Shown: positions 3,510 to 19,589 of the stretch, piece by piece
Numbering within the stretch: position 1 is the first letter of the stretch
How the letters are laid out: each line of letters starts with the position of its first letter
Origin: Caecitellus pseudoparvulus
Taxonomy: Eukaryota; Protista; Bigyra: Bicosoecida
Length of the DNA stretch: 64,000 bases
Reading direction: 5' to 3'
Assembly: GCA_965644315.1 (NCBI GenBank)
Contig: CBFFRQ010000044.1
Coordinates: forward strand, 310,001-374,000
Program-made: the position numbers and the translations under genes
Notes under the pieces: generated by a model
What the model was told of the DNA's origin: nothing
The model's input: only the letters and a program-made list of their open reading frames with translations
Database searches by the model: none

Positions 3510-6500
3510 ATGAGCTCGCGGAGCATGGGCGGCGGCACAGTGCGGCCCTTAGATGTGGGACGGAATGCAAACACCGAGCCCCCTCTCAAGGTCAAGGACG
3601 TGTTGTTCAAGGTGAGCAGTGCTGCGAAAAGGACACCATCAACTGTAGTCACGTCGCCGCGACCCGTCACCACTGCAGGTGTTATTTCTGGCTGCCAAGG
3701 ACTCCAAAGTCAGCAACATTACCACCATTGTGCTGACAAGCATTCGTACAGCACAAATGATGGGGTTTGCCGTGTCTGCCTTGCAAGTTGCGGCGGAAGA
3801 CGCGGGCCAATTCCGTGAGTTGGCACAAACACGCTACTTCTCCCGCAGTGCGTTTTTCATGCACCTCGAACGCCCCTCCCCTGCCGCAGAAAGCGGCATG
3901 CGTGCCCTGTCCAGCATTCTCAGCACTCTGAGTGTGGGAAACATGGTCTCCACGTTGCAGCTGTCTGCCGACCTGTCCCCTGCCCTGCTCTGGCTCTCCG
4001 TCGCGTTTTCACTGACGTCACTGGTTTTCCTCGGCTCTGTGACGATCAACATGTTGGCCAGCACGGCCCACTCCGCGTGGCAGTTGAAGACCATGCGGAA
4101 ACTCGCCCTGCTGGGCTCCACGGTCCTCTTCATCCCCGTCGTCAGTGCGTGCCCTGCACTTCGTCACAGCACGTTTCCCCGTTTTCACTTCACTTCTCGT
4201 TCGGCACATGCCGCTCCGCACATGCCGCCCGCTCGCCGCGCCACTTCGCAGGCTTGCAGCTGAACTGGCTTGCATGCCGTGACCCAGCCTTGCTTGCCTC
4301 GATTGGGAGTGCTGAGCAATGCTACAACGGCTTGCACCTGGCCGGCGCCATCGTCATCTTCCTCACGCTACCGCCATTCATTGGGGTGGCCGGAGTTACA
4401 GCTGCCTGCTACGTAGACCATGCCCTGCGCGGCGCCACGTACAACACCAAGACCCACGGCCGGGCGGACACGGTGCTGCTCATCGGACAGGTGCTGGCCA
4501 TTGCCCTGTTCGAGCTGTCTGAGCCAAGCAGCAGCATGTGGTTCAAGGTGCTTGTGCTGCTGGCACTCGGCGTGTACTGGGTGCACGCGTTTGTCATGAC
4601 ACAGCCCCACGTTATTGGGCACATGAACGACATCCGGGCGGCACAAGGCGGTGCCTATGCCTGGGCAGCCTTCAGCCTGTTCATGGCCGCCGTGTACCCA
4701 GCTGGTGACTCGGGGCTGCTGCTCCTTGCCGGGGTCGCGCCCTTCGCTGGCCTGTGCGCTGCAGCCGCCCACATCAGGCGCACTCGTGTTGAGATGGCAG
4801 CCTTCATGGACCTGCACAGCATGGCAGACATGCACCGGTGGGGGCTAGCACGGGTACGGCAGTACATGGCGGTGAAGGGGGAAGGCGGAGCCAAAGCGGA
4901 GTTGATCACCCTGCTGCGGGATGTGGGGCTGACGCAGACGACATCCCTGCAGCTGCGAGGCCGCAGGTCCACCTTGCAGAGCGAAGTCAAGGCTGATCAG
5001 GCGCCCCAGAGCAAGCCGGCCGCCTCCACTGCCGTCGCGCCAAAGGGCGCTTCAGCGCCCGTCATTGACGATTCGAAGCCGCTGCCCCCCCGGCCAGCCA
5101 CCCTGCACCTCGCACGCATGGCTCGCACGGCATCTGTGGAGTCCAGTGCCATTCCAGGGAGTGTCATGGAGCCGGGCCAGTCTGTGGCGCTGGAGACTGT
5201 GGCGGAGGAACGGGCGCCGTTGAAATCGGCGCTGAAGCAAGTGGAGCGGGAACGCCGCGATTCCACCATAGAGCCCGGCCAAGCAAGCAGTGGCCCTGCC
5301 ATGACCTTCCAAGTCGGGCATGAGCGATCCATCTCCTCCGCCAACCGGCACATGGAGCGTGCCTTGTTGACAGCGGCTGACCGTGCATTCAAGGCTGCAG
5401 CCGCGGTGGCGGGCGCCAGCACCCTGGCGCACTTCACGAAGGCGTCCTTCTATAGGTACTACCGCTCCAGCCGCTACATCGAGTATGTCGCCTTGAATGA
5501 TGCCAAGGCGGGTGGACCTCCTCTGGATGTCGCTTTCTTTGTGTACCAACGCACACGCCAACTGCAAGAAGCACAGGCCGAGTTTTCGTCAGTGGGGGAA
5601 GCCAAGCTGTCTGCCATCGACCGGGTGCTATACGACCAGCACTGGACCGCTGCAGTCAAGGCGGAGGTGGACTGGCACACGGCACAGGTGCGAGTGTGGA
5701 GCGTTCTGGCCACGCCTGACCCCAGCGCGGAGGAGCTGCACGAGGCTGGCATCCAGCTGGCACGTGCTCTCATCACAGCCCAGACGTCATACGACGCCAT
5801 GCTGGCCATGAACCCCAACTCTTCCCGCCTCCTGCGCGCCATGGGCTCCTACCGCATCCGCATGTGTGGCGACGTGGACGCCGGCAACGCGTTGCTGTCC
5901 CGGGCGGAGCGCATGGATGCGGCGGCCTTCCAGCGCAGCCAGGCCGAGCTGCCCTTCTTCCAGTACGGCGCCCACATGCCCACAAAGAGTTTTGTCGTGG
6001 ACGAGTCCTGTGCCCTCATCACTGCCTCTGGGTCCCCCCACAGCATCGGGGAAGTCACTGACGCCAATGCGACGGCAGCTCGCATGTTCGCCTGCACCGT
6101 GCCCACCCTCATCTCCAAGGCACTGCCAGACCTGCTGCCGCCCATTCTGGGGGAAGCCTTCGAGGCATCCATGCTGCAGTACACGACTTCTGGCGACGGG
6201 TTGGCCTTTGACAAGGTGCGCCTGATGCTGATGGAGGACGCTTCCCAGCACCTGCTGCCTGTGGCGGCCCTGCTGCAGGAGACGCCCAGCGTGGACACCA
6301 GCATGACCATGAACTTCACACTGGCCCTGCAGAAAGTGAACACGCCCTTCGACATGTTGCTGTGCGCGGGGCCGGACAATGACTACCGTATCATTGGCGG
6401 GACCAGCGCCGCCTTCACCATGCTGCGCACGACACCCCAGGCCATCCGGGAGCAGACAGAGCCTGCTGCGGCGTCTGTGCTGCGCTTCATGCCGCAGCTG

Positions 6501-9482
6501 GACATGGCAGCTGCGCGGGATATGTACGGCTGGGGCTCTGTGGAAGACATGGTGTCCGCTTCTGACACCCGTGACGGGTCGAGACCCGGCTCCCCCGCCC
6601 ACGGCAAAGCTGCCAAGACGGATGTGCTGCGGCGGCAGCAGCTGGCACGGAACGGCTCGTCGGTCTCCATGCGATCTGACGTCGCGCTGCATGGGGCCCT
6701 TCGCGCAGCAGGGTACGTTCTCGTGGCTGACATGCAGGAGGAGGCTCCCGTTCCCCACGCCCAGCTGCAGGCTCAGACGCAGGAAGTGGAGTCAGGCCAA
6801 GTGCCGCTCATGCTCATCATGTGGCCTTCCAGCACTGTGCGGCGGCTGAAGTCTGGACAAGCCAGTTGCCGGTCGCCACCAGGAGCCCTGCAGAAAGTGG
6901 TACAAGCTGCCATGCAGGCGGCGGCGGCGCAGCGCAAAGTGCACATCCAATCGCCCACCAGCATGGCTGCACGCGAAGGTGCAAGGCAGCACCCGGGCCC
7001 GCAGCATGCAGCCAAAGGTGCGCCACGGGCATTGTCGCCGGCCCCCAGTGCCAGCGGCAGCAGCACACCCAGCAGTGCCTTGCCAATCATCCTCCCCACT
7101 ACCGCTGGTGGTCCTGGTTCAAGCCACCTGGAGATCTCAGCGGTGCAGCAGGCGTCAGGAGCTGCAGGGGCCGAGTCAAAGTTTGGCCCACGAACACTGC
7201 AGCCCCTGAAAGTGCCCACACGGTCCGACATGTCCTATGCCACGCTGGCGGAAGGCGAGTCGCAGCTGTCGGACATCTTGTCGAGGCCTGAGAACCCGCA
7301 CACTGGGAGGCGGGTGTCTGTGCCGGGAGCAGCCCCATTCAAGGTGGACGCGGCAAAGCATGCGGATGGCAGTGCGCCTCAGCTGCCTGAAGGAGGGAGC
7401 ATGACTCCGCCGCCGGGAGAAGACGAGGCAGGGACGTACATGGGGGGCGCCTCCTCTAGCGGCGTGTCGTCAGTCAGCTCTCACACACGCCGAACACGGT
7501 TCTTGCTGCGGTCCGTCCTTGGCCAGGGCAAGCACCCCGCCGTGGCGGCAGTGCTGGTTTCCCTCGGTGTGCTGTTTGGGACGATGGTGCTGCTGGCCCT
7601 CGTTTTCTGCACAGTCGTTGTCGTGGAGCGCGAGACCTCGGAGCGGTCAGAAGCCTCCCTCGTCACAGGCTATGCCCGCACGACGCACATGCTGTCAGGG
7701 TCTTCCCACGTGCAGCACCTTCTGCTGGAGAGCCAGGAACACTTCCAGCTGCTGCCCAGCGGGCTGATCCGATATATGCTCACGTATGACCAGCAGCAGT
7801 TGTCCAAGGAGCAAGAGCAGCTGTCTGGAGACCACCGACTGCTGTACAACACAGACGGCAAGACGGTGCTGGATGGTGAGCGGGTGACAGTGGTGGACCG
7901 CACTGATCAGGGCAGGGCAGTGAACGTGACACTCACTGTTCCCGAGGCGGTGCAGTGGTTCATCTCCCAGCTCAAGCGCATCGCTGACCTTGCCCGGAGT
8001 CAGGTGACTCCTGCTGAGCCGCACGTCGCTGCAGCAGTGCACAACGCACTGCCCGTCATGCTGCCGCTGCTGGAGGAGAACAAAGACCTCGCGTTGAAGG
8101 CATACCTGGACAAGGAAGAGGAGCATGATTTCCTGCTGTATGGCAGCTACCTGGGCCTGTTTTTCGTGTGCGTCGTTGGGTCCTCGGCGTTCCTGTGGTG
8201 GCAGCTGAACGCTCTGCGGCGCCACCGCACGATGCTGCTGGACGTGTTCACGTTCGTTCCCCGCAAGGTGAGCAAGAAACTCAAGAATATCTCCCAGGTG
8301 GCGCTCCTCGCATCCATGAACCACGCACAGGCCGAGCTTGGGGATGCGGAGCTGGAACTGGGCAAGGCAGCAGGTGCAGGGGAGGGTGACGGGGAGGATG
8401 CAGCTGCCGCCAAGCATGTGAGCGAGGGCACCACTGCACTGGACATTCCCCGCATCACGAAGCTGGCAGACCGAGCGTCTCGCCGGGCACCTTTCGAGCA
8501 CCCCTGGAAGACCGACTTGGCGGCAGGATTCCGCCTGTGGCTGCCCGTCCTGTTCATTGGCGTCTTTCTCGCCGCAGTCTTCGTGCACTCGCAAGACCAC
8601 CGCGTGAGGCGCAAGCAGATTGCACAGCGAGCGTACTTCTCCGAAGCCCTCCTGGACAGCCTGCTCACGCTGGATCTGCGCCTGGCAGCGGCACTGTCCG
8701 ACGACGTGCGGGCCATGCAGAGTGACGTGCAGTCGATGACCGACCTGCGTGCGTCATTCGACGCCGCCCACGAACGCGCCCATGTAGACTTGACCATCAT
8801 CATGCAGGGCGTGACCAGTGGGCCCATCGACGGTGTGTCCACCCCAGGCCCGGCCCCGGGGGATGACCTGTTCACGTTGATCTTCAAGGATGCCTGTGCG
8901 TACATCGACAGCCACACACACTCCTTGAACAATGCGACGTACTTTTCCGCCGCAAGCTGCGCGGCCCTTGACGATGGCGTGCTGCGCTCGGGGCTGCAGG
9001 CGGGCGTATTACGCTACCTGTCCCTGGCCACCCGCGCCTTCACAGACGCCCTCGCGTCGCGGGCCGAAAACGGCGGCACCCTCCCCCCCAACTTCAACAC
9101 CACAGCTGCTGCGGCCTCGGCACGCACAGCCACGCGCCTGCTGCACCCGTACTTGCTGGAACTTGGCAGCATGGCCACTGCCCAGACTCGCATTGAGGTG
9201 GCAGCTTCCTTGACAGAGGAAGCGGCTGTGCTCTTTGCGATTTCTGCCAGCCTGGTGCTGGTGCAGCTCATCGCGCTGCTGGTGTATTTCTTGCCGCACT
9301 TGAAACGCCACGGGGAGGACACCGTTGCCACGCAGATTCTGCTGACAGTGCTGCCTTCTGCGCTGCTGACGGCAGATATCGACATGCACGAAGCTGTCGT
9401 GGAGGCTGTGGAGAGTGTTGAGGCTGCCTTTCCCCAGGCGGGCGTGCTCTCCAGTGCCCACAAGTACATCGCAGCAGCGTAG
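3510..9482 (+). CDS. TmcB/TmcC (tiny macrocysts)-like large membrane protein with PAS domain; introns 3612-3678 and 4145-4251
   Basis: N-terminal multi-TM block, a helical TPR-like region (NPNSSRLLRAMGSY), a PAS-like segment (IGEVTDANATAARMF...LPDLLPP), then C-terminal TM pairs around loops with a C...C..G.L..GL motif. The introns join three ORFs in frame. Confidence 0.7.
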
Positions 9483-11987: not shown

Positions 11988-12481
11988 AGCTGCACGTGTA
12001 CAGTGTTTGGATTGGGTGTTGGTTTGCGCCCGCTTCGCGCTTGTGGTGCAGGTGGTCGGCGAGGCGTTGCGCCGGACTCGCCCGTTTCACGCTGAAACTC
12101 CGCACGACACCGCGGCAACCGTGACACAACAACTGCAGGGCCGGCCCAAAATTACACCCGTCCACGCACTACACCAGTCATGATTACTCGTCTTCTTGCT
12201 CGATCTCTGCCCCAGCCTGTGTTGCAGGCCGGCCTGGTTCGTGCCAGCATTTGCCGCTTCGCTTCACGTTTGAACGCCCCCACCGCCACGCTGCCGGACC
12301 AACCCCCCCCCTCCCCAGGGACTGTCGAGGCCCCTCGTTGCTCTTTCCAGCTTCCACACTTCAGTGTTTACATTTGAGCCTGTGAGTGCCCTGGTTCGGC
12401 TTGCCTTGGGCGGCGCAGGAGCCCCGTCGTTTCACCGTGAAACTCAAATGGACCGCGCCCCCCACACCGCAGCCAGCTGGC

Positions 12482-15226
12482 ATGGCAGACGCGAGCTCCC
12501 CTACGCGGGGCAGCAAGCGCACACGAGACGCAGGGCAGTCCTCAGCACTCTTCTCCACGGAGTCATCGGATGAAGACGTGCCTGCTGCGTCAGCGGACGG
12601 TGACGTAGACTTGTCGCAGTCCAGGGCAGCAGATGGCGCGCCGCTCGACGGCGCCGCCCCCCCCGCACCCAAGCGCCCTCGCTCACAAGGCACCCTGGCA
12701 GCCTTCTTCCAGCCCCGCAAGGCCGCCTCTGCCCCGGCTCAGCGCCAGTTCACCTCCACGGCTGCCGCAGCGGTGGCGGCGGCGTCCCCTGCACCAGCCA
12801 AGCGCAAAGTACGCCAGGCGGCACCCGCTGCTCCCCAGGCCGCAGCAGCTGCAGGGATCGAGTCAGCAGGCAGCGACGACGACGAGGAGGAGGATGATGA
12901 GACGCCTGTGGCTGCTGCGGTCGACAGTGCCCCGCAAGTGTCGGACACGGTGTCTGGCCCGGTGCTGGGGGAGTACCACCCACTGGAGGCAGTGCAGGAC
13001 CTGTGGAAACCGGGCGAACCAGTGCCCTTCCGCGCCCTGACACGTGTGCTGCGGGAGGTGGAGGGCATCACTGGGCGGCACGCGATCCAGGAGCTGGTGC
13101 GGAATTTCTTCCGATCTGTCATCGCGTGTTCCCCCCAGGACCTCCTCCCCGCCGTATACATGTGCAGCTCCAAGCTGGCGCCCGAGGTGGACGGCATCGA
13201 GCTGGGCATTGGCGAGAGCATCCTGACGAAAGCCATCTGCCAGGCCACTGGCCGGCAGCTGAAGGACGTCAAGGCGGCACTGAAGGAAGCGGGCGACCTG
13301 GGGAAGGTTGCGGAGGCGTCCCGCAGCAAGCAGGCGACGCTGGGCTTCGTGGCGGCGCCCAAGCCCCTGCTGCTGCGTGACGTCTTCGCGACGTTCCGGG
13401 ACATCGCCACGAAAAGCGGCAAGGCCTCCCAAGACGCCAAAATATCCCTCATCAAGCGCCTGCTGGTGAAGGCGTCGGGGCAGGACGCCGAGCCTCGGTA
13501 CATCATCCGGGGCCTGCAGGGCAAGTACCGCATCGGTCTGGCAGCCAAGAGCGTGCAGACGGCTCTGGCGCAGGCCGTGACCATCACGCCCCCAGCGGCG
13601 GGGTGCGAGGGGGAGGGCGGCAGTTTCGCGCGGCGCCTGGACACGCGCGTGTCGCCCAGCGGCAAGGCCCGCCCCGCAGAGGCAGTGGACGCGGAGCTGG
13701 CGGCTGCAGATGAAACGCTCAAGCAGGTGTTTTCAGAGCTGCCCTCGTATGACCTCATCGTGCCTGCACTGCTGCGTGGTGGCGTGGCGGCGGCTCGCGA
13801 AGCCTGTTCGCTCACACCCGGTATGCCCGTGACTCCCATGCTGGCCAAGCCCACCAAGGGCGTCTCTGAGGTCTGCACGCGCTTGGAGGGGGTGGCCTTC
13901 ACCTCTGAGTGGAAGTACGACGGCGAGCGTGCTCAGGTGCACAAGATCCCCCCTCGGGCACAGGGCGAGGGGGGTGTCACTGCCGCTGCTGCCGCGTCAG
14001 GCGGCAGTGCGCATATGGGGGAGGCCCGGGGGCAAGGGCACCGCATTTTCTCCCGAAACCACGAAGAAACGACGGGGAAATACCCCGACCTCGCCGCCAT
14101 CCTCGCCAGTGCCGAGCATGCGGCGGGGGACAATTGGCGCCCCTACCCCGATTCCGCAGTGGTGGGCAGCGAGCCGGGGGACATTCTCGCCGACGACGCC
14201 GAGCTGGCCATCGCCGCCAGCAAGGCTGCCTACGACGACTCCCTGGCACTGTTCCCCCACGGTGCCGTGGCCGAGTTGGAGGACTACATCATTGATGGCG
14301 AGGTGATTGCGTACGACCCAGACACGGACGCACTGCTGCCGTTCCAGCGCCTCAGCACGCGCGCACGGAAGGACGTCACGCTGGCCAACATCACAGTGCC
14401 TGTCGTGTACGCTGCGTTTGACTTGCTGTACCTGCAGGGCAAGAGCCTGCTGCAAGTGCCCCTGGAAGTGCGCCGGGCGTTGTTGAAGCGTTTCTTCAAA
14501 GAAGTCCCCGGGAAGTTCCGCTTCGCTGTCGGGTACGACACGTACAGCGGCGACATGGACGCTCTGCGGGGACAATTGGACGCAGCAGTGGAGGGGCACT
14601 GCGAAGGGCTCATGGTGAAGACGCTGCGCTCGAACGCCACATACGAGCCCAGCAAGCGCAGCCTGAATTGGCTGAAGCTGAAGAAGGACTACATGGACGG
14701 CCTGACAGACTCGCTGGACTTGGTGGTCGTCGCGGCGTGGTATGGCAAGGGCAAGCGCACTGGCACGTACGGTGCGTACTTGCTGGCTTGCTACGACGAG
14801 GAGGAGGGGGAGTTCCAGTGCATTACCAAGGTGGGCACGGGTTTCTCCGACGCCGCCCTCGCGTCACACACCAAGTCCTTCAACGAGGACTTGGACCTGG
14901 TGGTGAAGGAGAAGCCCCGCAACGTGAACGCCAGCCCCAACATGCGGCAGGTGCCAGATGCCTGGTTCACGCCGCGGGTTGTGTGGGAGGTGAAGGCGGC
15001 TGACCTGAGCATTTCCCCCATCTACACTGCCGCCATCGGGCGGGTGTCTGCCGACAAGGGCATCGCCCTGCGTTTCCCTCGCTTCCTGCGCATTCGGGAG
15101 GACAAGTCGGCCGAGCAGGCCACCAACGCAGCACAAGTGGAGAGCATGTACCGAGCGCAGCCACTGGCAGGGGGGTCAGGTGGGGGTGTGAGCGTGGAGG
15201 ACGGCATTGGGGAGTACGCCGAGTGA
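12482..15226 (+). CDS. LIG1: DNA ligase I
   Basis: PIP box QGTLAAFF, DNA-binding domain (ELGIGE, RIGLA), motif I EWKYDGERAQ, IIDGE, AFDLLY, EGLMVK, WLKLKKDY, and OB fold ALRFPRFLRIREDK. Confidence 0.97.
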   Translation: MADASSPTRGSKRTRDAGQSSALFSTESSDEDVPAASADGDVDLSQSRAADGAPLDGAAPPAPKRPRSQGTLAAFFQPRKAASAPAQRQFTSTAAAAVAAASPAPAKRKVRQAAPAAPQAAAAAGIESAGSDDDEEEDDETPVAAAVDSAPQVSDTVSGPVLGEYHPLEAVQDLWKPGEPVPFRALTRVLREVEGITGRHAIQELVRNFFRSVIACSPQDLLPAVYMCSSKLAPEVDGIELGIGESILTKAICQATGRQLKDVKAALKEAGDLGKVAEASRSKQATLGFVAAPKPLLLRDVFATFRDIATKSGKASQDAKISLIKRLLVKASGQDAEPRYIIRGLQGKYRIGLAAKSVQTALAQAVTITPPAAGCEGEGGSFARRLDTRVSPSGKARPAEAVDAELAAADETLKQVFSELPSYDLIVPALLRGGVAAAREACSLTPGMPVTPMLAKPTKGVSEVCTRLEGVAFTSEWKYDGERAQVHKIPPRAQGEGGVTAAAAASGGSAHMGEARGQGHRIFSRNHEETTGKYPDLAAILASAEHAAGDNWRPYPDSAVVGSEPGDILADDAELAIAASKAAYDDSLALFPHGAVAELEDYIIDGEVIAYDPDTDALLPFQRLSTRARKDVTLANITVPVVYAAFDLLYLQGKSLLQVPLEVRRALLKRFFKEVPGKFRFAVGYDTYSGDMDALRGQLDAAVEGHCEGLMVKTLRSNATYEPSKRSLNWLKLKKDYMDGLTDSLDLVVVAAWYGKGKRTGTYGAYLLACYDEEEGEFQCITKVGTGFSDAALASHTKSFNEDLDLVVKEKPRNVNASPNMRQVPDAWFTPRVVWEVKAADLSISPIYTAAIGRVSADKGIALRFPRFLRIREDKSAEQATNAAQVESMYRAQPLAGGSGGGVSVEDGIGEYAE

Positions 15227-15343: not shown

Positions 15344-16518
15344 ATGTCGGCTGCCGCCCGTGCCTTGGCAGGGCTCCCCAGCGCTGCTGCCTACCTCGCA
15401 CGGCACTGCAATGCACAGGGGAGCGTGAAGGCGGGGCTGCTCACCTCAGAACACGGCTCCTTCCTCCTTGCCCAGCTGAGTGCGCCTGCCGCCAGCAATG
15501 CCCTCTGCCCGCGCATGATGCTGCAGCTCGGAGGCTTGCTTGGGACGCTGCAGCAGACGACGCCTGATTGCTGGGGCCACCCCAGTGTCGTGCCGCGGGC
15601 CTTGGTGCTGTGTGGGGAAGGGAGGCACTTCTGTGCCGGGGCACGCTTGGACCGCATGATGCAGCGGCAGACAGGTGAGCGCGGGGCGCACCTGGCATCC
15701 ATGGACTGTGCCGCAGCCCCGCCCAGCCCTGTGCAGTGCCCAAGGGCCAAACGTTCTTCCGCACCCCCTCCCTGCACTTCGCAGGTATTCACATGAACGT
15801 GTTCATGCAGCACATCACCAGCGCGCTGGGCACTCTGCCGCTGCCCAGCATCAGCCTCGTCGGCGGCGCGGCAGTTGGCGGTGGGGCCGAGCTGGCCTCG
15901 GCGACATGCTGGAGGTTCGGCAGTGCTGCCACAAAGGTGCACTTTGTGCAGACTTCGAAGGGCCTGCCCACTGGCTGGGGTGGTGCTGCTGCGTTGTGCC
16001 GAAACGTCAGTCCGCGCGCCGCCAAGCGACTGCTGCTTCCTGCTGGGTCCTCGGCAGCTGAGGAGCTGGCTCAGCTGGGGTGGCTGGATGACGTGCTAGT
16101 GGATGCACCAGCTGATGCCATCGATGGCGTCCACTGGGATGTCAGCAGTGGAGCCCTGGACGCTGTGCGTGGAGCAGCCGTTGGCGGCCCCTCCGCGCTA
16201 CGCGACGCGGTAACGGACGCATGTGCTTCGGAACACGCCAGCACCGACGCTGCAGACTGGCCGACACCGCTGCACAGTGAGGACATATCCGATTTAAGCA
16301 TTGCATTGTTGACACGGTGCGTTTTGCCGAGGTTTGGCTCTGCAGCGGGCGCGCCAGCCTCCATTTGGCGGAGCCATGCGGTGCTGGCCGCTGGGGCAGA
16401 GCCACTCGGCGGAGTGGGGCCTGCACTGGAAAGAGAACGCCAGTTGTTCTGCGAGGCTTGGCGGGGCCCTGCTCACGACGAGGCGCTGCAGGCCGCGGGT
16501 GTGGCACTGCCAGACTGA
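15344..16518 (+). CDS. ECHDC1: Crotonase-superfamily protein, ethylmalonyl-CoA decarboxylase (ECHDC1)-like; intron 15675-15784
   Basis: Motifs FCAGARL, LPLPSISLVGGAAVGGGAELA, KVHFVQ..KG..TGWGG and C-terminal ERQLFCEAWRGPAH. Confidence 0.7.
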
Positions 16519-16530
16519 CGCGCAGGTCGG

Positions 16531-19500
16531 TCACTGCTGTGCAGCGTCTTGCAGCGTCACACAGGACGCCGAGTCGTCCACATCCACGCCACTGGCCACA
16601 CGGTGAGGGATGGCAATGGGGGCAAGGCGCTGGGGCGGCAGGGTCACGTGGCCTGTACGTGTGTGTTCGCCTGTCAGGGCTGTGTCTCTCTCTGGCACGT
16701 CGGCGGGGGCGCCGTCCAGGGTGGGGGACAGTGGGTGCATGTCCGAGGCGCTGACGGAGGCAGAGCGACCATGCCGGGGGCTCATGCCTGAAATGTTGGG
16801 GTCCATGGTGGTGCTGGTGTCGCGGGGCGCACAGCCCATGGCGCTGCCACCAGTGCACTGGCGCAGCAGGCCATCTGGCGGTGGGCTGAGCCCCGTCGCA
16901 GACTCGACATCACTGACCCCAGCAACGTGCAGCGACGTTGCTGGGGCACCCCCGCCGTCCTTGCCCAGGCTGGACCTGTCGGGCAGGGCGCCCCGAGTGG
17001 ACCCATCCACCACCGGCTCCCGCAGCGTCTCCACGACAGCCAGGAGTTTGTGCAGGATGGGCACGGGCGCCTCGGGCAGGTGGTGCAGGATGGCAGACAC
17101 CAGCAGCGCCACCGTCTGGTCAAATACATCGTCAGTGATGCCCAGATGTGCGTGCCCCGCCGCCATGTCCTTCCCAGAGTACTTCACATCGCCAGCGCCC
17201 AGAACGGTGGAGATGAAGGTTTCCTGCAGGTGCCGCATGCGGCCCATGGCGACGTTCTTGAAGAACGGCGCCGTGGCGGGGTGTGACACGAGGAAGATGT
17301 AGAACGTGTCCACCACGGCGTGCACGGCGGGGGCACCGCCAATGGCCTCGTAAATCGTCTTGCCACCCAGCACTTCAGCCAGCGCTGCTTCGTTGGCCTC
17401 TGCCTGCTCAGCCAAGGTGGTGGAGGCAGGCAAGCCCGCCGACAGCAGCTGGCTCAGCTGACCCTTGAGCTGCGCAAAGGTCTGGAAGGGGATGTCGTTG
17501 CAGTGCATGTGCAGGGCCAAGGGTTTGGGCAGCGCGGCACAGCCATCGCGGTTCACGGCGTTCAGGACGGCTGTTGCACCTTGCAGCTGCAGGCCGCACC
17601 AGGACACATCCAGATGTTGCAGCTGGCCCCGAGCGGTGCAGTGGGCGATGCCAGGCGCCATGAGCTCTGCGCCCGCGGGGGCAAGGTCCTTGTTCCCTGT
17701 CAGGTTCAGGTGTGTGAGGGTGGTGCTGTCAGACAGCAGGCGGGCCAGGGCTGCGCCGTGCAGAGGCGTCAAGCCGCAGTGGGCCAGGCTCAGCTGCGCG
17801 ACGCGGCTGTGCACGAGGGCCGTGACGAGCGTGTCCAGCGTGCCCGGGGACAGGGGGATGTGGGACAGGTCCAGCTTGGTCAGAGGCGTGTACTGCACCA
17901 GGAACGCCCCAAGGCCGGCAAGCGGCGGCACGGAAGCCGAAGGTGAAAGTTCGGGCGCCGGGCCGAGGCAGTTCAGTTGTGCGGCGCCAGTCTTTTCAGT
18001 GGGCGGCAGAAACAGCTCTTCGTTGCCTGCCAGGGACAGGCCCGAGACCATGATGGCAGCGTTGGTGGAGATGGCGCCGAGGGTGAGCTGCATGTTGGCG
18101 GGGGACACCTCGTTGAAGGAAAGGTCCAGGAACATTCCCGACACGGCGCCTGACGCGGCGCGGGAGGTGGCTAGAGCACGGTACAGCGCGCTCCAGGTAG
18201 AGTCGGGGAGGCCCACGAGTGACCGGCGTAGGTTCACCACTCGCGTCTGGGGCCCAGGGACAGCGACAGCGCCCTTGGCGGCGGGGGCGTCCCCCGCTGC
18301 ATCCCCTCGCGGTGCCGAGGCAAGCAGCCCAAGCGTCTTGGCTTCCAGGCCAGTAACAAAGACACCGAGGGCGATGTTGCGGGTGGTGAATGCCACAGGC
18401 AGCAGCAAACCCAGCCATGCGGTGGCCAGGATGTACTGTGCGTTGGTGGTGGGGAAGGCCAGCGACAGCAGCGCCATGGTGTTTGTGAACAGGATGGCTG
18501 CCAGGCCGCCCAGGACATAGGCATTCCAGGAAGTACTGAAAAAAGGCTGGCTCAGGGCCACGGCCGCCGCTGTGATCACGCCCAGCGCCAGGAGCAGGGC
18601 GATGTTGACGGCTGATGGCAGCACGTCGCGAAGCAGCCCCAGCACGAGCGCCATCATCACCTTCAGAAGCATCATGGCCAAGGCGAAGCCGGGGTTGCGG
18701 TCGGCACCCAGCGCCAAGGCGGTGCCCAGGCGGGCCTTGGAAATGGCGTCATGCCGGCTGTGCTCGTGGTGCCAGCCAACTGCGACAAGGGCAAGCACCA
18801 GAGCCACGGCGAAGGTGGAGGAAGCTACGTGGGCTGGGCTTGCACAATCAACGTCAAGGAAGCTCGCGACGCCGCCGGCACAGCCACAGGCAGAGAAGAG
18901 GAACCTCGCTGCAGGGATAGCCAGGAAACTCTGCTTCAGGGTCAGGTTCAAGTGCATGCCTTGCACGATTGTGCTGCCCAGGCTGGTGTGTAGGTGCTGC
19001 AGCGGCACCAAAAGCAGGACGGCGTCTGCCGCGACGAGCGCAGCCAGCGACACAAGCACCGCCAGGTTCACAACAGAGGGCAAGGGGACCTGTACATGAT
19101 TGGGAGCGGCGGTACTGCGTGATTTCTAGCGCACAGGTGCGCGCTGCAGAGATTCGCACCTCCAAGTACAGGACTCGCCCTGCCCCGCCAACGAATTGCA
19201 CGAGGGGGTCAGGGAAGCCGACTTCGAACTGGAATGGCGCCACCATGATCTGAGCAACAGTGGCCAGGAACCCTGCGAGGCAAGGCACGCAGCGTGGCGG
19301 GCATGCGCGTGGCTGCCGCCTCGACTTCCAGTGCACTTCGCGTTCACGAACCCAGGGCTGGTGCAGCTCGAAGCACCGTGCTCCACCATGACGCCCACGA
19401 CGCCTGCTTTGACAGCGCAGCCCTCCCAGCAGGCGTGTTTGTGGAAGGTAGGCTCCGTTGGCGCAGCAGCATGCGACGAATGGCTTCGTCTGCGCTGTTG

Positions 19501-19589
19501 CGGCGGTGTCTTGACAGCCGCCGTTTCGGCACAGCTGACGCAGGTCCACCAGACGCAGGCGCCAGCGACGGCGACTTTGCCTCCTCCAT
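16531..19589 (-). CDS. Multi-pass membrane protein + RNI-like LRRs + group I (2/2) truncated hemoglobin; introns 19273-19351 and 19090-19159
   Basis: About 7-8 hydrophobic segments, followed by LRRs (LTKLDLSHIPL, LSLAHCGL, LTHLNLTGN, LQHLDVSWCGL). The globin domain reads TIYEAIGG...VDTFY...APFF...LQETF...LGAG..YSGKDMAAGHAHLGITDDVFD. Confidence 0.85.

What the first reader, a model, noticed from the sequence alone, without database searches (positions are those of the whole stretch)
16531..19589. Membrane-anchored LRR / truncated-hemoglobin fusion: a candidate O2/NO receptor
Seen: most of the TM block, ~6-8 RNI-like LRRs and a complete group I trHb (~17000-17365) lie in one exon (19089-16531), so the fusion is not a splicing artefact. 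The globin keeps the GG motif, PheB9-TyrB10, PheCD1, GlnE11 and proximal HisF8 (GKDMAAGH), with Met at E7. Known: trHbN proteins are mostly small and soluble and act in NO dioxygenation or O2 binding, and classical globin-coupled sensors use 3/3 globins. I do not recognise this architecture. Inference: the heme ligand state is relayed through the LRR to a membrane transducer or channel, or NO is detoxified at the membrane.
Basis: partly seen in the sequence, partly recalled or inferred. Interest (0 to 1): 0.85.

Follow-up and report, generated by a model that had tools for sequence, protein, structure and literature searches.

The report
Channel-like membrane protein carrying a truncated hemoglobin
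This protist gene really does encode one protein that joins a channel-like eight-helix membrane domain to a cytosolic leucine-rich-repeat arm and an intact heme-binding truncated hemoglobin; it belongs to an uncharacterised family found across distant eukaryotes and is a good candidate for a heme-based gas or redox sensor wired to a membrane protein.

Summary
Window 19089-16531 (minus strand) is one open exon. It encodes seven TM helices, eight RNI-type LRRs (Pfam LRR_6), a linker helix, a group I truncated hemoglobin and a 152-aa tail. The globin (aa 573-698, window 17367-16990) keeps GG, PheB9-TyrB10, PheCD1, MetE7, GlnE11 and HisF8. A small upstream exon (to 19160) adds TM1.

The fusion is not an artefact:
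- A second strain's scaffold carries it.
- A paralogue 36 kb away carries it.
- Homologues occur in Phaeomonas (a single transcript), Cymbomonas, Paraphysoderma and metagenomes. All 14 globin-bearing members keep the heme pocket.

New findings:
- The TM block is a remote homologue of the PF06011 "TRP-like" Flc/Pkd2 putative channel domain and of the TM module that heads TmcB-type proteins.
- Topology puts the LRR and globin in the cytosol, so this is not an LRR ectodomain receptor.
- The two paralogues are old, but their LRR4-8+globin cassette is homogenised by ongoing gene conversion under strong purifying selection.

An LRR + T1-globin chimera was noted in Allomyces in 2012. I found no description of the TM-linked form. 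Function is inferred only, and RNA evidence could not be obtained.

The parts
19347..19589 (-). Putative exon 1 region. ATG at 19589-19587 opens an 81-codon frame for a basic, probably cytosolic N-terminus. The true donor site inside it is not determined.
   Evidence: Sequence reading. Only weak, non-significant similarity to the paralogue's upstream region. No RNA evidence.
19160..19291 (-). Exon 2 (5' boundary approximate). Encodes TM1 and the following outer loop (CVPCLAGFLATVAQIMVAPFQFEVGFPDPLVQFVGGAGRVLYLE).
   Evidence: Conserved in the paralogue (tblastn) and in all full-length homologues (alignment A1).
19090..19159 (-). 70-nt GT..AG intron with an in-frame TAG. Its removal joins ...VLYLE to VPLPSVV.
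   Evidence: The junction matches contiguous homologue sequences. The intron is not conserved in the paralogue.
16531..19089 (-). Large exon 3 (stop codon at 16531-16533). Encodes TM2-TM8, LRRs, linker, globin and tail.
   Evidence: Open frame. Contiguous in second-strain scaffold L001 over 18663-13359 and in the paralogue.
18316..19083 (-). TM block within exon 3 (aa 1-256): seven helices, the outer loop C-x(10-12)-C-x4-H, and the conserved QPFF motif.
   Evidence: AF2 helices, family alignment, homology to TmcB-type and PF06011-type TM modules.
17494..18255 (-). RNI-type leucine-rich-repeat solenoid (aa 277-530) with 8 beta-strands and a variable insert at aa 355-392.
   Evidence: Pfam LRR_6. 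AF2 strands. Foldseek matches to ribonuclease inhibitor and NLRP3/NLRP14 LRRs at E about 3e-5.
17368..17493 (-). Helical linker and pre-A region between the LRR and the globin (aa 531-572).
   Evidence: AF2 helices 533-548 and 557-572. The L-x-E-x-L motif before the globin is conserved across the family.
16990..17367 (-). Group I truncated hemoglobin domain (aa 573-698). Y595 (B10) is at 17299-17301, M616 (E7) at 17236-17238, Q620 (E11) at 17224-17226 and H644 (F8) at 17152-17154.
16534..16989 (-). Non-conserved C-terminal tail (aa 699-850), Ser/Thr/Pro-rich, probably coding and disordered.
   Evidence: 152 stop-free codons (chance about 0.02 at this GC content). Only 2 substitutions in 456 nt against the second strain, compared with about 2.8% in the intergenic region downstream (Poisson p 3e-4). 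Unrelated to the paralogue's tail. Variable tails are typical of the family.
16991..17907 (-). Gene-conversion tract shared with the paralogue at G000:C44:288528-290615. It is 98.6% identical and covers LRR4-8, the linker and the globin.
   Evidence: blastn. 12 synonymous against 1 nonsynonymous changed codon. dS 0.054 inside the tract against about 1.6 outside. Second-strain alleles at aa 400, 415 and 444 equal the paralogue's.

Best explanation
The gene encodes a single integral membrane protein with three conserved modules:
1. An 8-helix membrane module (N-in, C-in). It is a remote relative of the PF06011 TRP-like Flc/Pkd2 putative channel/transport domain, and it is the same module that heads TmcB-type proteins.
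2. A cytosolic RNI-type LRR solenoid joined to the last TM helix.
3. A C-terminal group I truncated hemoglobin with a complete, HbN-like heme pocket (TyrB10/GlnE11 distal pair, hydrophobic MetE7, HisF8).

Shown: the architecture, its conservation across distant eukaryotes, purifying selection, the predicted fold and the predicted topology.

Inferred: the globin acts as a heme-based regulatory (sensor) domain. Its ligand or redox state (O2, NO, possibly CO or Fe2+/Fe3+) would be passed through the rigid LRR arm to the membrane module, changing ion flux or transport or the partners bound by the LRR. Confidence in the architecture is about 0.95. The figure given below is for the sensor-coupled-to-membrane-module mechanism.
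For: Architecture:
- One open exon with Pfam LRR_6 and Bac_globin.
- Confident AF2 model with pTM 0.84, which suggests a fixed domain arrangement.
- trHbN and RNI structural matches.

Not an artefact:
- Same sequence in an independent scaffold.
- A paralogue in the same contig.
- Homologues of 800-970 aa with the same TM+LRR+globin order in Phaeomonas parva (an MMETSP transcript), Cymbomonas, Paraphysoderma and metagenomes.

Selection:
- 12 of 13 changed codons are synonymous in the conversion tract (binomial p 2e-6).
- 15 of 21 differences between strains are synonymous, with none in the globin.
- dN/dS is 0.37-0.45 in the old 5' half.

Heme pocket: B9, B10, CD1, E7, E10, E11 and F8 are identical in 14 of 14 globin-bearing members.

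Channel-like TM module:
- The profile of the family's TM block finds TmcB-type giants in the same genome (E 2.6e-7 and 7.4e-7). Five of the six I scanned carry Pfam TPR_TmcB.
- hhalign against PF06011-type TM domains gives 94%, E 1.4e-7. With foreign sequences only it gives 84%, E 8e-6. Reversed controls give 0.1-0.2%.
- ESM-atlas shape match at TM-score 0.65 over 255 residues to a PF06011+TRP_N cluster.
- Pkd2 is reported to be Ca2+-permeable on membrane stretch and to have a cytoplasmic tail (PMC9727806, PMC6727746).

Sensor rather than enzyme:
- Close relatives P0022 and P0026 keep TM+LRR and a globin-length segment but have lost every heme-pocket residue. That fits a regulatory add-on better than a catalytic core.
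- The same TM module carries other cytosolic modules (TPR, PAS) in TmcB-type proteins.
Against: - There is no functional, expression or heme-binding data.
- Known trHbN proteins with a TyrB10/GlnE11 pocket (M. tuberculosis HbN, Chlamydomonas THB1) are best known as NO dioxygenases, not sensors (my own knowledge of the field).
- The PF06011 link is remote. No Pfam hit to PF06011 reaches any threshold on the TM blocks. PF06011 proteins themselves are only putative channels, and some are described as flavin or heme carriers (PMC9600462, PMC6727746).
- No solved structure resembles the TM module (best Z 9.7, generic helical bundles).
- pTM 0.84 is a prediction, and I could not inspect the inter-domain contacts.
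Confidence: 0.42

Rival explanations
1. Membrane-tethered NO dioxygenase or nitrite reductase. The globin is a catalytic trHbN that detoxifies or produces NO at a particular membrane. The LRR recruits a reductase or client, and the TM module serves mainly as an anchor or as the protected target.
For: The distal pocket is HbN-like: TyrB10, GlnE11 and a hydrophobic E7. The best structural matches include M. tuberculosis HbN. Chlamydomonas 2/2Hbs with extensions show nitrite reduction that is modulated by their termini (PMC7082302).
Against: An 8-TM module conserved at motif level across supergroups is far more than an anchor needs. Relatives without any heme-pocket residues keep the rest of the protein. 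No reductase domain is present.
Confidence: 0.27
2. Heme or flavin handling. The PF06011-like membrane module moves heme, FAD or a related cofactor, and the cytosolic globin is a heme acceptor, buffer or heme-level sensor for that transport rather than a gas sensor.
For: The TM module is homologous to the Flc/Pkd2 domain. The FLC family was found in a heme-uptake screen and is needed for FAD import into the ER (Protchenko 2006, as cited in PMC9600462 and PMC6727746).
Against: trHb globins hold heme tightly with HisF8 and are not known as heme shuttles. The invariant TyrB10/GlnE11 pair is a ligand-stabilising feature for diatomic gases. The Flc link to heme transport is itself indirect.
Confidence: 0.1
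3. Gene-model or assembly artefact: two genes (a membrane protein and an LRR-globin) merged by a stop-free GC-rich spacer, or a hidden in-frame intron.
For: At 65% GC, long stop-free stretches arise easily. No RNA data were available. The aa 257-280 and 355-392 linkers are poorly conserved and have low pLDDT.
Against: The same contiguous arrangement occurs in an independent scaffold, in the paralogue and in distant homologues, including a Phaeomonas transcript that also has long linkers at the same two places. The last TM helix runs continuously into the cytosolic part in the model. Substitutions in the linkers do not disrupt the frame.
Confidence: 0.04

Closest known systems
Allomyces macrogynus 1129-aa LRR + group 1 T-globin chimera (AMAG_16521T0; Hoogewijs et al. 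2012, PMC3287990)
   Same: An RNI-type LRR lies immediately N-terminal to a group I truncated globin, followed by an unassigned C-terminal tail. It is eukaryotic and uncharacterised.
   Different: The paper describes its N-terminal 560 residues as RNI-like (FUGUE) and mentions no membrane domain. The protein here, and its 800-970-aa homologues, have an 8-TM TRP-like/TmcB-type module instead.
Single-domain and extended group I truncated hemoglobins (M. tuberculosis HbN; Chlamydomonas THB1, THB4, THB11; Tetrahymena and Paramecium trHbN)
   Same: The 2-on-2 fold (TM-score 0.87-0.92), GG motif, PheB9-TyrB10, PheCD1, GlnE11 and HisF8.
   Different: Those proteins are soluble and small, or carry short extensions. 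THB1 uses LysE10 as the sixth ligand, while this protein has LeuE10. MetE7 is invariant in this family. This globin is the C-terminal domain of a polytopic membrane protein.
PF06011 TRP-like family (S. pombe Pkd2; S. cerevisiae Flc1-3 and Yor365c; Cryptococcus Flc1)
   Same: The membrane domain is remotely homologous over TM3-TM7, including the outer C...C-x-P-x-H loop, a Lys in TM5 and the 'PF' motif. The C-terminal part is cytosolic.
   Different: There is no signal peptide or ML-like/TRP_N ectodomain. No Pfam-level match is found. This protein has 8 helices and an N-in topology, and its cytosolic tail is an LRR-globin rather than a coiled coil.
TmcB family (Dictyostelium tiny-macrocysts protein B; Pfam TPR_TmcB, PF25474), including the neighbouring 1801-aa ORF at window 4077-9482
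   Same: An N-terminal multi-TM module of the same family (profile E about 1e-7 to other TmcB-type ORFs in this genome), followed by cytosolic modules.
   Different: TmcB-type proteins carry TPR_TmcB (and here sometimes PAS) after the TM module. This protein carries LRR + trHb and has no TPR_TmcB.
Globin-coupled sensors, including the membrane-bound GsGCS of Geobacter sulfurreducens (PMC8076648)
   Same: The logic is the same: a heme globin fused to a membrane or transmitter part, with ligand or redox state proposed to control the output.
   Different: GCSs are bacterial or archaeal. They use a 3/3 sensor globin at the N-terminus and have defined outputs (MCP, GGDEF, kinase). This protein is eukaryotic, uses a 2/2 group I globin at the C-terminus, has an LRR as linker and a TRP-like TM module.

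Membership tests
Group I truncated hemoglobin (trHbN / T1 globin) | Pfam Bac_globin match above the gathering score | tested here: met
   34.1 bits against a cut-off of 21, aa 576-665.
Group I truncated hemoglobin (trHbN / T1 globin) | 2-on-2 helical fold | tested here: met
   The AF2 globin region has pLDDT about 90. Foldseek TM-score (by target) is 0.91-0.92 at rmsd 1.4-1.5 A to Tetrahymena and Paramecium trHbN, and 0.87 to HbN.
Group I truncated hemoglobin (trHbN / T1 globin) | Proximal HisF8, TyrB10, PheCD1 and the Gly-Gly motif | tested here: met
   H644, Y595, F608 and G582-G583, by alignment to THB1. Invariant in 14 of 14 family members, except that the second Gly varies in four.
Group I truncated hemoglobin (trHbN / T1 globin) | Closer to group I than to groups II or III | tested here: met
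   Group I chains score E 2e-11 to 2e-6. Group II chains (2bkm, 1ux8) score only 3e-4 to 0.03.
Group I truncated hemoglobin (trHbN / T1 globin) | Binds heme b and diatomic ligands | not testable with these tools
   Needs recombinant protein and spectroscopy.
RNI-type leucine-rich repeat (LRR_6) | Pfam LRR_6 above the cut-off, and about 28-aa repeats forming a strand/helix solenoid | tested here: met
   33.5 bits against 23.4. Eight strands spaced 27-36 aa, apart from one variable insert. Foldseek matches to ribonuclease inhibitor and NLRP LRRs at E about 3e-5.
PF06011 TRP-like (Flc/Pkd2) family | Pfam PF06011 match at the gathering score | tested here: not met
   No PF06011 hit on any family TM block, even at E up to 10. 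This locus is not among the genome's 26 PF06011 hits.
PF06011 TRP-like (Flc/Pkd2) family | Homology of the TM domain at profile level | tested here: met
   hhalign 94%, E 1.4e-7, 166 columns. With foreign sequences only: 84%, E 8e-6. Reversed controls: 0.1-0.2%. Shape match at TM-score 0.65 over 255 aa.
PF06011 TRP-like (Flc/Pkd2) family | N-terminal signal peptide plus ML-like/TRP_N ectodomain | tested here: not met
   No such Pfam domain is present. The TM module is N-terminal, preceded only by a short basic segment.
PF06011 TRP-like (Flc/Pkd2) family | Ion permeation or transport activity | not testable with these tools
   Needs reconstitution or electrophysiology.
TmcB family (PF25474) | TPR_TmcB domain after the TM module | tested here: not met
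   Absent from this ORF and from all family members scanned.
TmcB family (PF25474) | Shared N-terminal TM module | tested here: met
   The A4 profile hits TmcB-type ORFs at E 2.6e-7 and 7.4e-7. Five of the six frames I scanned carry TPR_TmcB. The direct comparison with the neighbouring ORF at 4077-9482 alone was weak (8%, E 0.004).
Globin-coupled sensor (GCS) | N-terminal 3/3 sensor-family globin | tested here: not met
   The globin is a C-terminal 2/2 group I globin. The Protoglobin Pfam match is only E 0.23.
Globin-coupled sensor (GCS) | Recognised transmitter domain (MCP, GGDEF, kinase, STAS) | tested here: not met
   Pfam finds none.
Eukaryotic LRR + T1-globin chimeras (Allomyces type, PMC3287990) | RNI-like LRR directly N-terminal to a group I globin in one polypeptide | tested here: met
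   Single HMMER stretches span LRR plus globin in many homologues.

The most novel reading that the evidence does not exclude
This family is a eukaryotic heme-gated membrane channel or transporter. A truncated hemoglobin senses O2, NO or redox state in the cytosol. Through a rigid LRR lever, it gates a TRP-like (Flc/Pkd2/TmcB-type) membrane domain. If so, the TmcB/PF06011 superfamily would be a modular 'one membrane output, many cytosolic sensors' signalling system (globin, PAS, TPR) spread across protists, algae and early fungi. The paralogue pair that shares one converted sensor cassette but has diverged TM halves might form a heteromer.
Probability: 0.3. Interest if true: 0.85.

Novelty: new variant of a known kind. 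Interest (0 to 1): 0.66.

Why it matters
Truncated hemoglobins are regarded mainly as small soluble NO or O2 enzymes. Heme-based gas sensors built on globins are known mostly from bacteria, where they use the 3/3 fold.

This finding differs in four ways:
- A 2/2 globin with an intact pocket is hard-wired to a polytopic, channel-like membrane domain.
- The family is conserved in stramenopiles, green algae and blastocladiomycete fungi.
- A pseudo-globin branch exists alongside the heme-competent members.
- The sensor cassette is kept identical between paralogues by gene conversion.

If the globin gates or regulates the membrane module, this would be a new route for O2, NO or redox signalling in eukaryotes that lack HIF-type systems. 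It would also give the poorly understood Flc/Pkd2 and TmcB membrane domains a tractable handle: a ligand-controlled version. The prediction can be tested directly with a roughly 140-aa recombinant domain and a heterologous expression assay.

Tried and rejected
- **Word-indexed homologue search with the whole ORF** found only the same species' ORF call. The exhaustive HMMER search was needed to find the family.
- **Direct hhalign of the TM profile against the neighbouring TmcB-type ORF** was weak (8%). The link became clear only with genome-wide profile hits.
- **Pfam scans of the TM blocks at E up to 10** gave nothing meaningful.
- **PDB-wide structural search of the TM module** gave only generic helical bundles (best Z 9.7, spectrin), so there is no solved relative.
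- **The ESM feature search** scored below 0.9 and is a lead only.
- **Codon-position GC** could not settle whether the tail is coding, because a convergent gene on the other strand confounds the control.
- **My first guess of a green alga is rejected.** The neighbouring LIG1's nearest relatives are unnamed (75% identity), and every named relative listed is at about 50% identity or less. Earlier notes call the organism a marine stramenopile-like protist, which I did not verify.
- **Misassembly or merged-gene artefact is rejected** (see the rival explanations).
- **An extracellular LRR receptor reading is rejected** on topology.
- **Spliced model:** Exons were searched and aligned separately by reference.
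Full report
**What is in the sequence.** The window comes from a GC-rich (about 65%) 30.6-Mb protist genome. Window 16531-19083 on the minus strand is an 850-codon open frame.
- Pfam finds LRR_6 (aa 453-476, 33.5 bits against a cut-off of 23.4) and Bac_globin (aa 576-665, 34.1 bits against 21).
- A sequence search of the PDB puts group I truncated hemoglobins first: Chlamydomonas THB1 at 2e-11, then THB4, C. eugametos LI637, M. tuberculosis HbN, and the Tetrahymena, Paramecium and Synechocystis globins. RNI/NLR-type LRRs match aa 390-520.
- Hydrophobic segments fill aa 1-250.
The globin lies at window 17367-16990.

**Gene model.**
- The open frame cannot extend upstream, because there is an in-frame TAG inside a 70-nt GT..AG interval (19159-19090).
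- Removing that interval shifts the frame by one and joins an upstream hydrophobic exon (about 19291-19160, ending ...VLYLE) to VPLPSVV at 19089.
- The joined junction matches the uninterrupted sequence of homologues (for example P0007, LVFVELPLPSVA). Exon 2 is conserved in the paralogue, and the intron is not.
- The ATG at 19589 opens a basic 81-codon frame that could be exon 1. It is not conserved, and I could not verify it.
I did not try another route.
- Exons were used separately by reference.

**Not an artefact.**
- An independent metagenome scaffold from a strain 98.7% identical carries the same contiguous sequence.
- A paralogue at G000:C44:288528-290615, 36 kb away and convergent, has the same TM-LRR-globin order in one open frame.
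- The exhaustive HMMER search found 1334 hits. Among the best were proteins of 800-970 aa in which one HMMER stretch spans LRR plus globin and a homologous TM block lies N-terminal to it.
- These include P0005 from Phaeomonas parva (an MMETSP transcript, so one mRNA), P0018 from Cymbomonas tetramitiformis, P0059 and P0095 from Paraphysoderma sedebokerense (accessions two apart on one contig, so probably in tandem), and several metagenomic proteins.
- All 14 globin-bearing members keep PheB9, TyrB10, PheCD1, MetE7, LeuE10, GlnE11 and HisF8.
- Two relatives (P0022, P0026) align to the LRR region at 34-36% identity and also over the last TM helices. They keep a globin-length segment but have lost every one of these residues.

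**Selection and gene conversion.**
- Between the two paralogues, the 5' half (TM block and LRR1-3) is old: about 34-44% amino-acid identity, dS about 1.6-1.7 and dN/dS 0.37-0.45.
- A sharply bounded 917-nt tract (window 17907-16991; LRR4-8, linker and globin) is 98.6% identical. It has 12 synonymous and 1 nonsynonymous changed codon (binomial p 2e-6), dS 0.054 and dN/dS 0.03. There is no difference at all in the globin codons.
- After ...VVDGSTRG the tails are unrelated.
- In the second strain, the three differences inside the tract (aa 400, 415, 444) are exactly the paralogue's alleles, so conversion is ongoing.
- Between strains, 15 of 21 ORF differences are synonymous, and there are none between aa 547 and 709.
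- The tail has 2 changes in 456 nt, against about 2.8% in the intergenic region downstream (Poisson p 3e-4). It stays open for 152 codons (chance about 0.02). It is therefore probably coding, as variable tails are in the rest of the family.

**Structure.**
- AF2 with a 44-sequence alignment gives pLDDT 88.9 and pTM 0.84 for aa 1-700. The model has seven TM helices, a long last helix running into the cytosolic part, eight LRR strands, a two-helix linker and a 2-on-2 globin.
- Foldseek matches the LRR to ribonuclease inhibitor and NLRP3/NLRP14 (E about 3e-5). It matches the globin to trHbN structures (TM-score 0.87-0.92).

**Topology.** I combined the AF2 helix boundaries of a full TM block with the family alignment. 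The loops predicted to be cytosolic hold 72 Lys+Arg in 472 residues. The opposite loops hold 23 in 445. With TM1 from exon 2, this gives 8 helices, N-in and C-in. The LRR and globin are therefore cytosolic, and a conserved acidic loop, C-x(10-12)-C-x4-H between TM3 and TM4, faces outward. This rules out an LRR-ectodomain receptor.

**Identity of the TM module.**
- Pfam has no model for it, and no solved structure resembles it.
- A profile of the family's TM blocks, searched against the window's own genome, found the two paralogues. It also found several giant open frames at E 2.6e-7, 7.4e-7 and weaker. Five of the six I scanned carry Pfam TPR_TmcB 300-450 aa downstream, and one also has a weak, sub-threshold PAS match.
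- This supports an earlier first-reader note (s1-652748) that the globin fusion and TmcB-type proteins share a membrane scaffold. My direct comparison with the neighbouring TmcB-type ORF at window 4077-9482 was weak on its own.
- The ESM-atlas shape search matched the module to a fungal PF06011 (TRP) + TRP_N cluster at TM-score 0.65 over 255 residues. The same family appeared in the feature search.
- The genome has at least 26 six-frame PF06011 hits in giant ORFs. One of them was also hit by my TM profile.
- Profile-profile comparison of the family TM blocks with seven PF06011-type TM domains gives 94% probability, E 1.4e-7, over 166 columns (TM3-TM7). The C...C-x-P-x-H loop, the TM5 Lys and the PF motif all align.
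- Reversed-alignment controls give 0.1-0.2%. Removing all rows from this genome still gives 84%, E 8e-6.
- PF06011 is the TRP domain of the fungal FLC proteins (Flc1 and its homologues); S. pombe Pkd2 is their homologue with a TRP-like TM domain. These proteins are implicated in Ca2+ homeostasis and stretch-activated Ca2+ permeability, osmotic regulation and FAD or heme transport, and Pkd2 has a cytoplasmic tail (PMC9600462, PMC6727746, PMC9727806).
- Dictyostelium tmcB is linked to cAMP signalling in macrocyst formation (PMC12750705, citing earlier work).

**Prior knowledge.**
- Hoogewijs et al. 2012 (PMC3287990) reported, as an unexpected by-product of a census, an Allomyces macrogynus 1129-aa protein with an LRR (578-800) followed by a group 1 T globin (826-944). 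They mention no membrane domain and give no function.
- Known 2/2Hb fusions listed in the THB11 paper are kinase, nitrate reductase, monooxygenase and multi-globin proteins (PMC7082302).
- A 2020 globin review does not contain the words leucine, LRR or transmembrane (PMC7475203).
- My searches found no description of a membrane-anchored trHb. The nearest analogue in logic is the bacterial membrane-bound 3/3 globin-coupled sensor GsGCS (PMC8076648).
- The library holds only open-access papers. The 2013 'Microbial eukaryote globins' chapter could not be read.

**Interpretation.** The architecture and its conservation are shown. The function is inferred.
- I favour a regulatory (sensor) role for the globin acting on the channel-like membrane module or on LRR partners (0.42). 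The reasons are the rigid predicted arrangement, the pseudo-globin relatives that keep everything else, and the use of the same membrane module with other sensor-type cytosolic domains.
- A membrane-tethered NO dioxygenase or nitrite reductase is the main rival (0.27), given the HbN-like pocket.
- A heme- or flavin-handling role is a minor rival (0.10).
- An artefact is unlikely (0.04).

**Verdict.** The gene is a new variant (the TM-linked form) of a barely described kind (LRR + T1-globin chimeras). It belongs to a cross-kingdom, uncharacterised family. Interest is 0.66.

Noticed in passing
L003:1246-3855 (G000:C44:288273-290882), outside the window: Convergent paralogue of the TM-LRR-globin gene. 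The 5' half is ancient (dS about 1.6). A 917-nt LRR4-8+globin cassette is kept 98.6% identical by gene conversion, and the C-terminal tail is unrelated and acidic.
   Followed up: yes
window 4077-9482 (+): An 1801-aa open frame with an N-terminal multi-TM block and Pfam TPR_TmcB (aa 508-616, 3e-14). It is one of many TmcB-type giants in this genome whose TM module is related to that of the globin fusion.
   Followed up: partly
G000-wide; e.g. L017-L024, including G000:C44:307493-307903 just left of the window: At least 26 six-frame hits to PF06011 (TRP-like Flc/Pkd2 domain). Nearly all lie in open frames of about 1,000-6,600 aa, and in the seven I examined the TM domain sits at the C-terminal end. 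This is a large expansion of a family described mainly from fungi.
   Followed up: partly
P0022 and P0026 (metagenome proteins): Relatives that align to the LRR region at 34-36% identity (and over the last TM helices) and keep a globin-length C-terminal segment, but have lost B9, B10, CD1, E7, E11 and F8. They form a pseudo-globin branch of the family.
   Followed up: partly
window 15736-16518 (+): A convergent enoyl-CoA hydratase-like ORF (ECH_1 in the call on scaffold L001) ends 13 nt from the globin gene's stop codon, so the two 3' UTRs must overlap.
   Followed up: no
window 18760-18830 (-), aa 85-108 region; alignment A4 loop L3-4: A conserved outer-face loop, C-x(10-12)-C-x4-H between TM3 and TM4, is shared with PF06011-type domains. 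It could be a disulfide or a metal-binding site.
   Followed up: no
P0059, P0095, P0158 (Paraphysoderma sedebokerense KAI9145190-92): The fungal homologues have consecutive accessions on one contig, so they probably lie in tandem. They carry an extra conserved C-terminal region after the globin that is absent here.
   Followed up: no
window 12386-15226 (+): DNA ligase I ORF. Its nearest relatives are unnamed metagenome or assembly proteins at 75% identity, and every named relative listed is at about 50% identity or less. The organism's lineage therefore stays unresolved and is not a green alga.
   Followed up: partly
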